Assembly: GCA_977016875.1 (NCBI GenBank) | Contig: CDRNST010000382.1 | Span: 1,860,001 to 1,924,000 of the forward strand | Length of the DNA: 64,000 nucleotides | DNA from: Pavona decussata | Taxonomy: Eukaryota | Direction: 5' to 3' | Part shown: positions 1,507-58,456 of the stretch, in pieces | Numbering within the stretch: position 1 is the stretch's first letter | How the letters are laid out: each line of letters opens with the position of its first letter | Notes under the pieces: generated by a model | The model's input: the letters and a program-made list of their open reading frames with translations, nothing else | Databases searched by the model: none | Told to the model about the DNA's origin: nothing | Made by a program: the position numbers and the translations under genes

Positions 1507-2084
1507 TTTTCTAAATGTACTTTAGCTATGTACTGTGTAGTGTTCCAATCTAAAAAAATCATTGCTCTTTTAAGGGTGAAATGAAACATTACTCCATAAA
1601 TGCACATTAAATTAAATAGCTTGAAGTATTTAATATTAAAAAACACAACCGTTTGTGGAGTATTGTTGCGAATATCGGTAACAGCAGGGTGATTTGACAA
1701 ATTAATGACATGTATGATGAATTCAATGACTATTAAACGCATTTGCATTGAAATTGTAGTAAAAAGAGAGAAAGCTTGCCGAATTTTTAAGCATTTTGCT
1801 GTGGAGTAATGTTGCTCTCGTTTGTTCACAGCTCTCAATAATAACTGTGATTGACAGGTGACGCCATGAAAAAGCGGACTAATTAAAGTAACAATTTGTT
1901 ATCATTCCCTTTTATTGTACACATAGCTAAAATAGCGAGTTTTCAACATGTCTTAACAAAGATTGTATATATCAGCTAACTAATTATATCAGAATGTTTA
2001 GAAATACAGTAACGATTTAATATTTTGTTCGCGAGCCTTTCCCTATAATCATTGCTTTGTCAATAACAGCAGTGTCTAGATCCC

Positions 2085-2925
2085 CTAGTGTTCGCAATAC
2101 TCTAGTTTGGAATTCTTTAAAAGACTCTTTAGCAATGCTTCTTTAAATGGCTTTTTCCTCAAGCATGTTCTTACAATGTGAAAGATTCCTTCAATAGGAT
2201 TGATGTCTGGACTACAACTTGGAATTTTTAACAATTCTCCCTCAATTTCTTCTAAAGCTCTCATTTCTACTTTAGACACCTGACTGGGATTGTTGTCCAT
2301 TACCAAAATGCGCTTGCCGTTTCTCTTAGGTCCTGCACGTGCAAAACAGAGATTAAAATGTTGCCGTATGAAATTCGCCAAAAAATTTCCGTTCAACTTC
2401 TCATATGGTTCTTTTAAAATAACTCCGTTGCCATAAGCTATTGACACAATATACAAACGTTTTCCTCCAGCTAAGTCCTTAGACCCTTTGCCAGTTATTT
2501 GCAGCCCCTCGCTCTTTCTGCGCCACACTTGGGCCTTAGGGGCCATTGCAGCACTCATTGGGTTGCTTTTGAAAACAAATTACACCCCATCCAAGAAAAA
2601 AGCAACTTTGTTGGCCCAAAAGCTTGGATTACTCCTCTCATATCGTTCCATTTTTCTCGCAAATTGGAGATGACTTTTCTTGTTGCTTTCGTTGAGTAGC
2701 CCTTTCTTCCGTGCTTGCTGGAAACCGAAACCCCTTGTTATTCAAGCATCTGGAATAAGTTCGCTCAGTTGCTGTTTGAAAGTTAAGTCCACTATATTCA
2801 ACTAGTTATTTTACAGTAACTGATACCCCCGCACTTCTAATTTTCAAGAGATTTCTCTTCAACATGCGTTCTACGCGAGGGGAAATTTTCCTTGGACGGC
2901 CGCTTTTCTTGCATGTCATAGGTTT
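2085..2925 (-). pseudogene. Degenerate Tc1/IS630-like transposase
   Basis: SGRPRKISPRVER N-terminal motif (ORF 2806-3042); MDNNPSQ and PSCSPDINPIEGIFH DDE-type motifs (ORF 2085-2558); frameshifted. Confidence 0.8.
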
Positions 2926-2949
2926 TGCTCTCTTCTTATTGAGATAAAC

Positions 2950-3440
2950 ATGGCCAAAACTAATTTTAGGATTATTAAGTCCGCAAGGAAAAGGGATATC
3001 CCAGTAAATATTCAAATACAAAAAAATGACGGTACTATCCATTCTCTAGATCGACAGGACCATATAAAATATCTTGGGATAATAACAGATGACTCAATCT
3101 CATGGAAATATCACATTTCGTGCATCTGTTCTAAAATCTCTAGGAATATCAGGATAACTTCAAAATTACGACATTATCTTTCCATTAAGCAACTAAGACA
3201 GATTTATTTAAATTTAATATACCCTTTCATATGTTACGCAATTTTAGCATGGGGTAGCACTTATAACTCACCTTTACAAAAAGTTCAAATTAAGCAAAAT
3301 CACCTAGCTAGGTTAATTTTCCTTGCCACAACTCATGGCAAGGATGTTAAGAGTGCTCACCCACTTTTAAACTTGATAGATATTCTTGCATATGCAGTAC
3401 ATAACGTTTATTGCCTTCATGCTCTAAAATTTACCCACCA
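2950..3440 (+). pseudogene. L2/CR1-group LINE reverse transcriptase C-terminal fragment
   Basis: IKYLGIITDDSISWKYHI...LYLNLIYP-like (QIYLNLIYPFICYAILAWGSTY) motifs typical of LINE ORF2 C-termini. Confidence 0.8.
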
Positions 3441-3444
3441 TATT

Positions 3445-54655: not shown

Positions 54656-55740
54656 TTAACATGTTGTGGACTTAAGTGTGCCGTTTTTTAACGGATATTT
54701 CACCATTTTGAAACGGTAAATCAAAAGAATAACCTCTAAGATGCACTCGACATTAAAAACGGTGGAAATTGGAGAGTTCCTAGCGAGGGAATCGTGCTTT
54801 GTTTGACAGTCTTAGACCACAACGCGAGACTGAAAAGAGGTCATTGAAAAGCTTACGTTATCGTAATGGAATTTCAGAAATTTCCGGTGATAGTCTGAGT
54901 CGCGTAACACAAGGGAAACAATGTAACGCGATCGTGGTGACTCAAACTATTCCATTAACAAGGATAGCTCTATAAATCTGCGAAGCATACAGTTGGAATT
55001 AATGCATCCCGCGTAAATGCCAGTATAGGCATTTTGTTCTTCAAAGTTTCTGTGATGCGACGATCATATTTAATTGATTCTTCTGCAAGGAAAAGTTTTG
55101 GTTTTTCAGCACGCTTCGGCGTGAGTCCATTGTGAAATGTTATTGTCTTTGTAGCATCACGGCAAGGACTGAAAAAAACAATATCTCCGGGTCTCTTTGG
55201 CAGAATTCGCTGATTCAAACGTTAAAATGTTCTCCCTTCATTGGCAATATTTTTCTTGAAACTTCCTGTGATGCGCCGATCACATTTACTTACTTTTTCT
55301 GCAAGGAAAGTTTTGGTTTGGCACGCACCGGCGTTTGTCCATTGTGAAATGTTATTTGTCTTTGTAGCGTCACGGCAAGGACTGAAAAAACGATATCTCC
55401 GGTTCTTTTTCGCAGAATTCACTGAGTCAAATGGTAAAGTGCTCTTTCTTCAAAGCCAAGAGTTTTCTTCAAAGTTTCTATGAAGCACCGATCACAAATT
55501 TGTAAACATTACGCGTTTTACGCGCACATTTTGGTTCGCTTATTTCTGAGCTGCACAGTAGCAATGATGACACCAACCCCTTTATTCTAAATGATGTTGA
55601 TTATGTCAAGGTCTCGTCAGACATGTTACGAAACTTTTCAATATCTAAACTACGCAACCTAGTCAACCAAACAAAATTTCATTTTTTGATTATCAGTGAT
55701 TAACAGGAAACTCAAGTCCCTAAGTATTCTTTAATATTAA

Positions 55741-56111
55741 AGGGGAAGTATCACGAAAATTTGCTGTTATTTCAAAACCCAAAAATGTTTGACTGTCAGC
55801 AGAAACAACGAAATAATTGTCAAGTTTGTTAAAAATTATCACCCCAGTGCAATAAAACTGTCGATTAGTGCCTCTGGCTAGAGACAGAGTAGGTCGGTTT
55901 GGATTGAAACTTGAAAAATATTGGGCTAATGTTTTTCAAGTTCTCGCATTTTTGTTTCCAAGATGCGCTAGAACAGATCACAAGTTGTTTCTTTCAAGAA
56001 TTGAGTTGATTTCGTTCCTCCCTTTATTCTAGAATTAGTTTGGTAGGTGATTGACGGTCTTATTTCATCATTTTTAACAAAAGATATCAAAAACCCCATG
56101 ATACTTCCCCT
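55741..56111. mobile_element. Kolobok-like MITE
   Basis: TTAA|aggggaagtatca ... tgatacttcccct|TTAA; purine termini rather than CCC. Confidence 0.8.
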
Positions 56112-56466
56112 TTAAGGGGTCTGAGTTTTGAGACACCAAGGCGTCTGAGATTTTGGAGGTGTGCGAGCTGAGTTTTGGGGACACCCCAAAAATTCATGTT
56201 TCATATTTTCATGTGGTTGTTTTAGTACCTTCTAATGTGCATACAACATGCAAGTGCTCAACACACATCCATGCATCTTAATTACACTTAAGAACATTGA
56301 AAAGGTCATAATAATGAAGGAATGAATTTTGAAACAAGATAAAGAGGCTAGAAGCCATTTTTTAGGTTTTCAAGCTGTCACAAAAGCCATGCATTCAGCT
56401 TGCTCTCTTATGGCAGGCAAGTGATGCTGACTGGCGAATTGTATTCATCAGAGAAATCCCACATTA

Positions 56467-57728
56467 AGGAGTGTTCATTATTTATGGGGAGGGGCGGGGG
56501 GACAAATGGGGAAACGGAACGTTTGGAACTTTTTGTATCCCCCTCAATGATTAAGGATAATTCTTTTTTGCCTCCCCCATGTTAACGTTTTTGACTCCCC
56601 CCCCCCCCCCAATGATGCATTTGTTATCAAACCATACTCTCATCCTCAACTTAGCGCTTTACTCACCTGCCTTTTGCTTGCTCCACTAGCAGTAGAAGAA
56701 AAAAATCAGCATTTGTGTTGCCTGTCCACCTCCTCACTGTTCTTCCAGTTCGTGTGACTTGACAGTCAACTATACAAATTAATGTTTTTGACATGAATTG
56801 TTAAAATAAATCTTAAAAAGGATATATGTTCTATCTTTTAAAACACTGGTTGTCTGATTTTTATACGGGATAATGCTGCTGCTTATGGTCAGTCTCTTGA
56901 TTGCCGAGATAAGTCATTACTGCCAAGAAATTGTGACAGAGTAGAGCAAGGGATAAAAGAACTTGAAGACCTTGAAGTACTGTTGGAAAAGGGAAAAGAG
57001 AAAATGATGGCCCACATGGAAGAGCTTTTTACTACCCCTGGTATATTAAAAAGATGGGCCAAAGAAGGAAAATTGTACTGTGAAGAAACTATTACGTATG
57101 TTAATGTACAGGTTGAAGTGATCAAGAGGGTGTTTGTCCAACTGGCAGACACTAAAAAAAAAGTCGAGTGAGTAGGAGGGGATAAGAGGCCAAGAGAAAG
57201 GCAAAACAGAGGAAAGAAAAGAGAAAAAGATTGTGCCCAGCTGCAGTTGTGGAGTCCTTGACTGGGGAAAGTGCAGAAGAAGTTATATTGCCACTGTCAG
57301 ATGACATGATCTGCCTGCAAAACACTGACAGCCTTCATCCAACCGTTCAAGTAAAAGGCCTAGATCAACTTATTTCTGAGGGCGGCCTATCTATTGGTGC
57401 AGCCAGTGAAATCCAAACATATCTAACTAGCAAATCCATTGAATGGAACCCATTTGCTGTGTAAACTATTGGTGTAAGATTACATTTTGAAATGCTCTTT
57501 AGCATTGTTGTGTCTTATGGTTTGATTTACTGTGGTACAGGTACATTAAATGTCATGCGGTTCTGGAAGAATTAAAAATAAAAAAAAAATTAAAAAACCT
57601 AGTGATATCAGCCCTCAAACTTTCCCCCCCCCCTCCCCCCCACCTCTTCCCCAGATCCAGAGTAAAACCTTTCTGAGCCCCCCTCCCATTTGCTAGTCCC
57701 CCCCTCCCCATAAATAATGAACACTCCC
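56467..57728. mobile_element. PIF/Harbinger-like non-autonomous element
   Basis: TTA|(a)ggagtgttcattatttatggggagggg ... cccctccccataaataatgaacactccc|TTA. Confidence 0.85.
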
Positions 57729-58456
57729 TTACTTTGCACTCTTATCACACAGGCTTGAAGCTTTCATTGATAAGCACATTTGCAAATGACCCTTACCGTG
57801 CATGCAATTCATACCACAATATACCCTGCTAAGTCTCAAGTGCGACAGCAAAAAGAAGGAAAACAAACACCAAAAACAGGAGAATACTGCGTGATCGCAG
57901 ACCCCGTTCCCAAGCCAGGTAGAATGATCATGAACAAATCGAGGAATTCCACACGAATGCATACAGTGTACGAAGGCTGCTTGAAGGCGCTTACTAGTGA
58001 CTCGGCGTTCTTCCCATTGAATTTATGAAAATGAACCACCAGATAAAATCTCCAACGCCCTTGCAACCAAAAAATAAAAAGTTCAGAGTGTCATTTCCAA
58101 AGGAGGGAAATTGCCCCATTTCGCGAACTTGATTTCAGTGATGAAGCGACACACGTGTGCTAGCCAACGAGGAAACTAAAAATTGCACGCTTAAATTCTA
58201 CTTACCATCACCAGAAAACTTCCTTTCTGCATTGGCATAGACTGCTACATTTCTTGTACGTACTCAGCAGGAACTACAGCGCAGCACATTCATTCAGAGG
58301 GATTCGCTGAATCAAACAAACTACATCACATCCACCCACGACGCAAGATGACCAACAATGCATTGCGATGCTAAAAAGTTGGGGGCTCGGCTAGCTTGCA
58401 GAACGCCGAATACCGAACGCCGAACGCCGAATCCTTGATAGTCCCAAAATATCTGC

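What the first reader, a model, noticed from the sequence alone, without database searches (positions are those of the whole stretch)
2000..58400. Candidate uni-strand (flamenco-like) piRNA cluster downstream of RPL7
Seen in sequence: ~56 kb made almost wholly of fragments from more than a dozen unrelated TE groups. By my count about 23 orientable TE-coding pieces lie on + and only 3 on - (duplicated copies counted separately), and the two young insertions are also on +. Random insertion would not give this skew. All are antisense to a leftward transcript starting near 58 kb or reading through from RPL7. From knowledge: Drosophila flamenco is a uni-strand cluster with antisense-biased TE fragments next to a host gene, and cnidarians have active piRNA pathways. 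The cluster function here is inference.
Basis: partly seen in the sequence, partly recalled or inferred. Interest (0 to 1): 0.8.

Follow-up and report, generated by a model that had tools for sequence, protein, structure and literature searches.

The report
One-way transposon graveyard beside RPL7
About 110 kb next to the ribosomal protein gene RPL7 is filled with broken and a few intact transposons of many kinds that nearly all point the same way, which fits a one-strand piRNA "transposon trap", but no small-RNA data could be consulted, so the function is not shown.

Summary
RPL7 lies on the minus strand, with its last exon at 60397-60696.

Methods that treat both strands alike all give a plus-strand excess in 2-58.4 kb:
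- Pfam-hit ORFs: about 10 plus, 1 minus.
- Distinct orientable elements: 12 well-supported plus, 2 minus (16:2 with weak calls).
- Long minus-strand ORFs tested against the genome were non-coding repeats. Long plus-strand ORFs belonged to multicopy coding families.

The skew continues to about -57 kb (about 10 plus, 2 minus elements). Over -52 to +58.4 kb, ORFs of 200 aa or more are 15:1. All elements together are 22:4 (p=5e-4). The co-oriented domain is therefore about 110 kb and chance is unlikely.

The piRNA reading stays untested. RPL7 has two AATAAA just after its stop, and AATAAA is not depleted on the minus strand.

A uni-strand piRNA cluster is my best explanation (about 0.45). Uni-strand clusters are already known in cnidarians, so this would be a new member of a known kind. 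The scan's first readers left about 45 similar unchecked notes on other DNA of this genome.

The parts
2088..2579 (-). Tc1/mariner-type transposase fragment (DDE_3). One of only two minus-strand coding relics in the window.
   Evidence: Pfam DDE_3 E=2.2e-9
2824..3456 (+). C-terminal part of a LINE ORF2
   Evidence: tblastn to residues 698-838 of an RT-bearing 931-aa ORF of locus L028, E=7e-14
3469..3804 (+). Second LINE-tail-like ORF (weak call). A third may lie at 4155-4391.
   Evidence: phmmer gives weak similarity to 2824-3456 (E about 0.03) and to 4155-4391 (E=0.001); motif seen by eye
4906..5322 (+). BTB-domain ORF inside a duplicated unit, with a second copy at 12784-13253 (+). It may be a captured host fragment rather than a TE.
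   Evidence: Pfam BTB E=1e-16; copies found
6649..8227 (+). Mutator-like transposase fragment, with a duplicated copy at 15156-16731 (+)
   Evidence: 45 own-genome matches with open frames up to 577 aa; homologues carry PF20700 Mutator; tblastn extent
9704..9985 (+). Old piggyBac transposase fragment
   Evidence: phmmer against the intact copy, E=1.9e-6; DDE_Tnp_1_7 E=2.8e-5 in the plus-strand tally
12225..12814 (-). LINE RT plus tail fragment, the second minus-strand relic. It sits at the edge of the duplicated unit.
   Evidence: tblastn to RT ORFs E=2e-13; homologous to the plus-strand LINE tail, E=3e-15
17498..17923 (+). THAP-domain ORF
   Evidence: Pfam THAP E=1.2e-6
18968..19579 (+). Fragment of an abundant gag-like TE protein family
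   Evidence: At least 75 own-genome matches with open frames of 400-650 aa; 152 database homologues without a Pfam domain
23949..24266 (+). Helitron-type PIF1 helicase fragment
   Evidence: Pfam PIF1 E=1.3e-11
25241..26056 (+). LTR-retrotransposon pol fragment, from the RNase H/integrase junction through the integrase zinc finger
   Evidence: Integrase_H2C2 E=2.7e-5; highest hexamer coding score among decayed ORFs; BEL/Pao-like motif seen by eye
26481..26777 (+). Second THAP-like ORF (weak call)
   Evidence: Pfam THAP E=4.6e-3
35497..39024 (+). Intact hAT transposase fused to an OTU protease, a young insertion
   Evidence: 1176-aa open frame; Dimer_Tnp_hAT, zf-C17orf113 and OTU domains
41425..42009 (+). 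N-terminal part of the same gag-like TE family, in plus sense
   Evidence: tblastn to the N-termini of gag-like homologues; in 6 other copies this piece lies upstream of the gag ORF
45047..46484 (+). Pieces of an unnamed multicopy TE-like protein
   Evidence: 18 homologues at 40-94% identity; match inside a 975-aa open frame elsewhere in the genome
52575..54215 (+). Intact piggyBac transposase, a young insertion
   Evidence: DDE_Tnp_1_7 E=2e-99; two 100% identical copies elsewhere
58000..60350 (.). Spacer between the TE domain and the RPL7 3' end. It is not CpG-depleted (o/e 1.04), its stretch 58.0-58.45 kb looks unique, and it holds an exon-like piece ending in a GT donor near 58206 on the minus strand. 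It is a candidate start region (inference).
   Evidence: Sequence; repeat map; CpG o/e
60351..64000 (-). RPL7 gene, with last exon 60397-60696, another exon near 61132-61326, and two AATAAA within about 35 nt of the stop. The gene body is strongly CpG-depleted (o/e 0.41).
   Evidence: Translations; 3' end; CpG o/e

Best explanation
The stretch from about -57 kb (left of the window) to 58 kb is one domain of about 110 kb. It holds old transposon and virus-derived fragments plus a few young, intact elements. About 85% have their coding sense on the plus strand, opposite to the neighbouring RPL7 gene.

The elements insert by unrelated mechanisms: LINE reverse transcription, LTR integrase, several DDE transposases, Helitron, and a parvovirus-like relic. 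The co-orientation is therefore most simply explained by selection after insertion, acting relative to a long minus-strand transcript that runs leftward from the RPL7 side.

The best-fitting known system is a uni-strand piRNA cluster. In such a cluster the precursor RNA is antisense to the trapped elements and is cut into piRNAs that silence their active relatives.

Shown here: the domain, its diversity, and its strand skew inside and outside the window. Inferred: the transcript, its start in the 58.0-60.35 kb spacer or by read-through from RPL7, and any piRNA output.
For: Strand skew by methods that treat both strands alike, inside the window:
- Pfam-hit ORFs are about 10 plus against 1 minus.
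- Distinct elements are 12:2 (p=0.013).
- The hexamer coding score is above 0 for 33 plus and 18 minus ORFs.

Replication in flanking DNA not used to select the finding, from -57.7 kb to 0:
- Plus strand: two THAP ORFs, a near-intact LINE (926-aa EN+RT), a second LINE, a Harbinger, a gag-like piece, LTR RT/RNase H, GIY-YIG, and a Parvo_NS1 relic.
- Minus strand: one alk-exo/SAP element and one weak SAP hit.
- This is about 10:2.

Whole domain: ORFs of 200 aa or more are 15:1 (p=5e-4), and all elements are 22:4 (p=5e-4).

The three youngest elements (hAT, piggyBac and the flank LINE) are all on plus.

No host-type domain was found on minus-strand ORFs across the domain.

The domain is CpG-depleted (o/e 0.56-0.78). 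The DNA just outside it is not (0.93 on the left, 1.04 in the 58.4-60.35 kb spacer).

Literature:
- Most Nematostella and Hydra piRNA clusters are uni-stranded (PMC5731801; PMC3592418).
- Mosquito uni-strand clusters lie directly downstream of expressed genes and hold antisense viral relics. In Culex the upstream genes are enriched for ribosomal protein genes (bioRxiv 10.1101/2022.08.22.504762).
Against: - There is no RNA or small-RNA evidence of any kind.
- RPL7 has two canonical AATAAA signals right after its stop codon, so read-through would have to bypass a strong terminator.
- AATAAA is not depleted on the minus strand: 71 against 67 in the window and 130 against 117 over the domain. 5' splice-site-like motifs are not enriched there either.
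- Antisense TE bias has not, to my knowledge, been reported as a feature of cnidarian clusters.
- The organism itself was not identified here.
- Some plus-strand pieces may not be independent. There is a 3.5-kb duplication, adjacent LINE tails, and possibly linked BTB+Mutator and THAP+gag pairs. Merging these gives 10:2 in the window (p=0.039).
- No control region of comparable TE density could be fetched.
Confidence: 0.45

Rival explanations
1. A long minus-strand host transcription unit that is not a piRNA source. It could be a giant intron or a long non-coding RNA starting near 58.2 kb. Insertions in the sense orientation, which bring polyadenylation and splice signals, would be removed by selection, leaving antisense ones.
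For: There is an exon-like piece with a GT donor near 58206 on the minus strand, in apparently unique sequence. The domain is CpG-depleted like a transcribed, methylated body, while its borders are not. Antisense bias of TEs inside genes is well established (general knowledge).
Against: No minus-strand ORF with a host-type domain was found anywhere between -57.7 and 58.5 kb. No host gene was seen out to -75 kb, except a possible plus-strand RING-finger gene near -65 kb. An 85% skew that includes DNA transposons is much stronger than the usual intronic bias (general knowledge). AATAAA is not depleted on the minus strand.
Confidence: 0.2
2. An ordinary TE-rich intergenic graveyard. The skew would come from chance and from non-independent pieces (duplications, one element split into several pieces, tandem LINE tails). 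It was then picked out because hundreds of windows were screened.
For: - A 3.5-kb unit is duplicated within the window.
- With conservative merging, the window alone gives only 10:2 (p=0.039).
- First readers left about 45 such notes on 785 windows of this genome. That is roughly the share expected in a 5% tail.
- My hand tally of neighbouring RT/integrase hits within 150 kb gave 20 on the same strand and 10 on opposite strands (p=0.1), or 16:10 without likely duplicates. So the genome background is near even.
Against: The skew was replicated in about 58 kb of flank that played no part in selecting the finding (about 10:2, one-sided p=0.019). Over the domain, ORFs of 200 aa or more are 15:1, and elements are 22:4 (p=5e-4). 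The co-oriented pieces belong to unrelated families, so duplication cannot account for them.
Confidence: 0.1
3. An orientation bias set at insertion or retention by something other than a transcript, for example the replication-fork direction across a large replicon or a chromatin domain.
For: The skew is fairly even across eleven 10-kb bins, as expected for a domain-wide physical cause. Many other windows of this genome were noted as co-oriented (unchecked).
Against: The elements use unrelated insertion chemistries, so a shared insertion bias of this strength is not expected. Reported fork-direction biases are only a few percent (general knowledge).
Confidence: 0.15

Closest known systems
Drosophila flamenco (uni-strand somatic piRNA cluster)
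   Same: It is a domain of 100 kb or more next to a host gene. It is packed with fragments of many TE families, most of them antisense to the presumed direction of transcription. Recent insertions share that orientation.
   Different: flamenco is defined by piRNA output, its own Pol II promoter and genetic effects on Gypsy-type elements. None of these was tested here. flamenco is dominated by LTR/ERV elements. This domain mixes DNA transposons, LINEs, LTR pieces, Helitron and a parvovirus-like relic.
Mosquito core piRNA clusters made by read-through from upstream genes (bioRxiv 10.1101/2022.08.22.504762)
   Same: These are uni-directional clusters that start right after the 3' end of an expressed gene and hold viral relics in antisense orientation. 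In Culex the upstream genes are enriched for ribosomal protein genes. Here the domain begins about 2-6 kb past the RPL7 3' end, and a Parvo_NS1 relic lies in the same plus orientation.
   Different: RPL7 has two canonical AATAAA signals at its end, and a roughly 2-kb spacer that is not CpG-depleted separates it from the TE domain. Read-through has not been shown. The lineage is different.
Uni-stranded piRNA clusters of Nematostella and Hydra (PMC5731801, PMC3592418)
   Same: If the organism is a cnidarian, this is the expected local kind. In Nematostella 402 of 457 clusters are uni-stranded, and most major Hydra clusters map to one strand.
   Different: Those clusters were defined from small-RNA reads. 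The passages I read do not report TE orientation bias or sizes near 100 kb. This locus is defined only by TE orientation.
Antisense bias of transposons inside long introns
   Same: In both cases co-orientation is opposite to a transcription unit.
   Different: The bias here is far stronger, it includes DNA transposons, and no flanking minus-strand host exons were found.

Membership tests
Uni-strand (flamenco-like) piRNA cluster | Dense 24-31-nt, 1U-biased, PIWI-bound small RNAs that map mostly to one strand | not testable with these tools
Uni-strand (flamenco-like) piRNA cluster | A long single-stranded precursor transcript from a defined start, either its own promoter or read-through | tested here: inconclusive
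   Only sequence hints exist. The spacer at 58.4-60.35 kb is not CpG-depleted, and an exon-like piece with a GT donor sits near 58206 on the minus strand. Against this, RPL7 has strong polyadenylation signals and AATAAA is not depleted on the minus strand.
Uni-strand (flamenco-like) piRNA cluster | High density of fragments from many unrelated TE families | tested here: met
   Found here: LINE, LTR pol, Helitron, piggyBac, hAT, Tc1-like, Mutator-like, Harbinger, THAP-bearing and gag-like families, and a parvovirus-like relic.
Uni-strand (flamenco-like) piRNA cluster | Most TE fragments share one orientation, antisense to the cluster transcript | tested here: met
   Co-orientation is 22:4 by element and 15:1 for ORFs of 200 aa or more over about 110 kb. 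It is opposite to RPL7. That it is antisense to a transcript is assumed, because the transcript has not been observed.
Uni-strand (flamenco-like) piRNA cluster | Loss of the locus or of biogenesis factors de-represses the matching TEs | not testable with these tools
   This needs genetics.
Read-through piRNA cluster (mosquito type) | The cluster starts at the transcript end of an expressed upstream gene in the same orientation | tested here: inconclusive
   The last well-supported plus-strand piece, the piggyBac, ends at 54.2 kb. That is about 6 kb from the RPL7 polyadenylation signals near 60.35 kb, in the direction of RPL7 transcription. Read-through itself was not observed.
Long intron of a host gene | Flanking exons of one gene on the transcribed strand | tested here: not met
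   No minus-strand ORF with a host-type domain was found between -57.7 and 58.5 kb. No minus-strand host gene was called out to -75 kb. Small exons would be missed.

The most novel reading that the evidence does not exclude
This would be one of dozens of flamenco-type loci in a non-bilaterian animal. Each would be a 100-kb-scale uni-strand trap in which transposons and viral relics are kept in antisense orientation, here seated just downstream of a ribosomal protein gene as in Culex. That would mean the antisense-selected trap design, so far documented mainly in insects, is ancient in animals or arises repeatedly.
Probability: 0.3. Interest if true: 0.65.

Novelty: new member of a known kind. 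Interest (0 to 1): 0.45.

Why it matters
If piRNAs do come from the minus strand, this locus gives a cleanly delimited test case of about 110 kb. It would show whether the flamenco-style design, with an antisense-biased TE and virus trap next to a housekeeping gene, exists outside insects. Together with the roughly 45 similar unchecked notes in this genome, it would allow a genome-wide test of how much TE orientation is shaped by piRNA-cluster selection. If no piRNAs are found, a 110-kb domain with 85% co-orientation of unrelated elements still needs another explanation.

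Tried and rejected
No human-likeness had been stated. I sent no RPL7 exon letters to search tools afterwards.
No random background blocks could be fetched, and no control on the right of RPL7.
- Two integrase (rve) searches were wasted on E-value cut-offs that were too strict.
- The RT/integrase ORF library found only two LINE pieces in the window.
- The hexamer coding score discriminates poorly (72% true positives against 22% false positives at score above 0). 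I used it only in aggregate.
- The polyadenylation-signal and splice-donor asymmetry test showed no asymmetry.
- Minus-strand long ORFs 7300-7785, 31503-31895, 56892-57296 and 40244-40594 were checked and rejected as coding. Plus-strand ORF 56842-57168 was also rejected.
- Exact-protein look-ups failed for 2088-2558(-) and 62407-62685(-).
- Earlier-findings look-ups gave titles only, with no strands and no follow-ups.
- I did not try to identify the species.

Full report
WHAT IS THERE

The window is G000:C382:1860001-1924000 of a 602-Mb assembly.

RPL7 lies on the minus strand. Its last exon is at 60397-60696 and another exon lies near 61132-61326. A SNORA73 snoRNA sits in an intron at 62426-62653. 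Two AATAAA signals lie within about 35 nt of the stop codon.

Both young insertions are confirmed and both are on the plus strand:
- an intact 1176-aa hAT/OTU ORF at 35497-39024;
- an intact 547-aa piggyBac ORF at 52575-54215, with two 100% identical protein copies elsewhere in the genome.

STRAND TALLY IN THE WINDOW

No repeat masker was available, so I used methods that treat both strands alike.

(i) Pfam on all stop-to-stop ORFs of 60 aa or more in 1.9-58.5 kb, at E of 0.01 or less.
- The 140 plus-strand ORFs gave BTB x2, THAP x2, PIF1, Integrase_H2C2, DDE_Tnp_1_7 x2, hAT and a weak Tc3 HTH.
- The 129 minus-strand ORFs gave only DDE_3. Positions were mapped.

- Plus strand: a LINE tail (2824-3456), Mutator-like pieces (6655-8227 and the duplicate at 15162-16731), gag-like pieces (18974-19579 and 41425-42009), and a piggyBac fragment (9704-9985).
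- Minus strand: one LINE RT/tail fragment at 12225-12814.

(iii) Own-genome protein searches on long ORFs that had no Pfam hit.
- Plus-strand ORFs 6649-7329, 18968-19507 and 46047-46484 belong to multicopy families with open frames of 400-975 aa elsewhere. Database homologues of the first carry the Mutator domain PF20700.
- Minus-strand ORFs 7300-7785, 31503-31895, 56892-57296 and 40244-40594 match only short, stop-ridden repeats or nothing.
- The minus-strand ORF 41634-42071 turned out to be the antisense reading of the 5' part of the gag-like family, which is in plus sense.

(iv) A weak hexamer coding score gave 33 plus and 18 minus ORFs above zero.

My element count is 12 well-supported plus against 2 minus (p=0.013). 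It is 16:2 with weak calls, and 10:2 if neighbouring pieces are merged.

OUT-OF-SAMPLE TEST IN THE LEFT FLANK

A public ENA contig (ERZ25073805, ctg133194) is identical to the window over 19.7 kb. Walking along it by exact-protein look-ups gave 75 kb to the left of the window.

Between -57.7 kb and 0, Pfam on called genes and on ORFs of 72 aa or more gives the following.
- Plus strand:
  - two THAP ORFs, one of them at L071:9239-9649;
  - a near-intact LINE, with an ORF1-like gene, a 926-aa EN+RT ORF and zf-RVT (L071:13335-18368);
  - a second LINE (L068:4645-7574);
  - a gag-like piece near -18 kb;
  - a Harbinger (L066:4559-5026, plus HTH_Tnp_4);
  - LTR RT/RNase H;
  - GIY-YIG;
  - a gag zinc knuckle;
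  - a Parvo_NS1 relic (L065:1752-2360).
- Minus strand: one element with Viral_alk_exo x2 and SAP (L066:5311-7188), and one weak SAP hit.

That is about 10:2 (one-sided p=0.019).

Without any annotation, over -52 to +58.4 kb:
- ORFs of 130 aa or more are 43:17 (p=0.001);
- ORFs of 160 aa or more are 26:7;
- ORFs of 200 aa or more are 15:1 (p=5e-4).

The plus strand led, or tied with the minus strand, in every one of the eleven 10-kb bins.

All elements together are 22:4 (p=5e-4). Pfam-hit ORFs are about 26:5 (p=2e-4).

Left of about -57 kb the calls become sparse and mixed. There is a possible plus-strand RING-finger gene near -65 kb and a weak integrase-like hit on minus near -62.6 kb. The co-oriented domain is therefore about 110 kb, bounded on the right by the RPL7 3' end.

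IS IT MORE THAN CHANCE?

The window alone, with duplicates and possible linked pieces merged, is only marginal once one recalls that hundreds of windows were screened. First readers left about 45 similar notes on 785 windows of this genome. All are unchecked and on other contigs.

The flank replication and the 110-kb totals make pure chance unlikely.

A rough hand tally of neighbouring RT/integrase hits within 150 kb in the genome-wide tables gave 20 on the same strand and 10 on opposite strands. It was 16:10 without likely tandem duplicates. The genome background therefore looks close to even. This tally is small and was made by hand.

HOW IT MOST LIKELY WORKS

The co-oriented elements use unrelated insertion chemistries. 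That points to selection after insertion, relative to something strand-specific that spans the whole domain. The obvious candidate is a long minus-strand transcript leaving the RPL7 side.

Two sequence hints fit a start in the spacer:
- 58.4-60.35 kb is not CpG-depleted (o/e 1.04). It lies between the strongly depleted RPL7 body (0.41) and the depleted TE domain (0.56-0.78). The DNA left of the domain is again undepleted (0.93).
- An exon-like piece ending in a GT donor lies near 58206 on the minus strand, in sequence that found no repeats among the scored matches.

These are inferences.

Points against easy read-through or a processivity-selected transcript:
- the RPL7 polyadenylation signals;
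- no depletion of AATAAA on the minus strand, at 71 against 67 in the window and 130 against 117 over the domain.

COMPARISON WITH KNOWN SYSTEMS

- The architecture matches Drosophila flamenco.
- It matches even more closely the mosquito core clusters. These start directly downstream of expressed genes and hold antisense viral relics. In Culex they follow ribosomal protein genes more often than expected.
- Uni-strand piRNA clusters are already known in cnidarians. In Nematostella 402 of 457 clusters are uni-stranded. Most major Hydra clusters map to one strand. A review states it generally (PMC9923473).

Even if confirmed, this would be a new member of a known kind. Possible added value lies in the strong antisense TE bias and the ribosomal-gene neighbourhood, which the passages I read did not describe for cnidarians.

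Membership cannot be granted. The defining small-RNA and transcript evidence could not be obtained.

VERDICT

- Uni-strand piRNA cluster: about 0.45.
- Non-piRNA long transcription unit: about 0.2.
- Other strand-specific cause: about 0.15.
- Chance plus non-independent pieces: about 0.1.
- Unassigned: about 0.1.

Noticed in passing
window 62426-62653 (-): An H/ACA snoRNA, SNORA73 (117.5 bits, full length), lies inside an RPL7 intron on the gene's strand.
   Followed up: no
window 4724-8230 and 12567-16740: A segmental duplication of about 3.5-4 kb at 89-99% identity. It carries a BTB ORF and a Mutator-like fragment, with a roughly 625-bp length difference between the copies. The minus-strand LINE fragment sits at its edge.
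   Followed up: partly
window 118-172 and 1455-1506: Inverted ends of about 55 nt bound a roughly 1.4-kb repeat with dozens of copies in the genome (76 matches). It is a non-autonomous DNA transposon at the very start of the window.
   Followed up: no
window 58401-60350 against 60351-64000 and the TE domain: CpG observed/expected is 1.04 in the spacer, 0.41 in the RPL7 body, 0.56-0.78 in the TE domain, and 0.93 left of the domain. This looks like mosaic germline methylation with an unmethylated island next to RPL7.
   Followed up: partly
L071:13335-18368 (about -44.4 to -39.4 kb from the window start): A near-intact LINE on the plus strand, with an ORF1-like coiled-coil gene (Baculo_FP_2nd), a 926-aa EN+RT ORF and a zf-RVT ORF.
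   Followed up: no
L066:5311-7188 (about -14.3 to -12.5 kb): The only sizeable minus-strand element in the flank. It is four adjacent ORFs with weak Viral_alk_exo and SAP hits, and its kind is unclear.
   Followed up: no
L065:1752-2360 (about -8.5 to -7.9 kb): A parvovirus NS1-like relic on the plus strand, co-oriented with the transposons. I observed it only and did nothing further with it.
   Followed up: partly
L069 (ENA ERZ25073751 ctg101360) against L068: A second public assembly of the same flank differs in structure. It has extra RT-bearing ORFs and a repeated 157-aa/71-aa/129-aa gene block, which suggests haplotype or individual variation inside the domain.
   Followed up: no
window 49866-50422, 55037-55496 and 9398-9630: Short tandem arrays: 278 bp x2 (96%), 212 bp x2.1 (82%), and 48 bp x4.8 (86%). 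The last one creates a spurious 113-aa ORF.
   Followed up: no
L073:10001-11404 (about -65.4 to -64.0 kb): Two plus-strand called genes of 194 and 144 aa, the second with a weak zf-RING_2 hit. They may be a host gene bounding the domain on the left, convergent with the proposed transcript.
   Followed up: no
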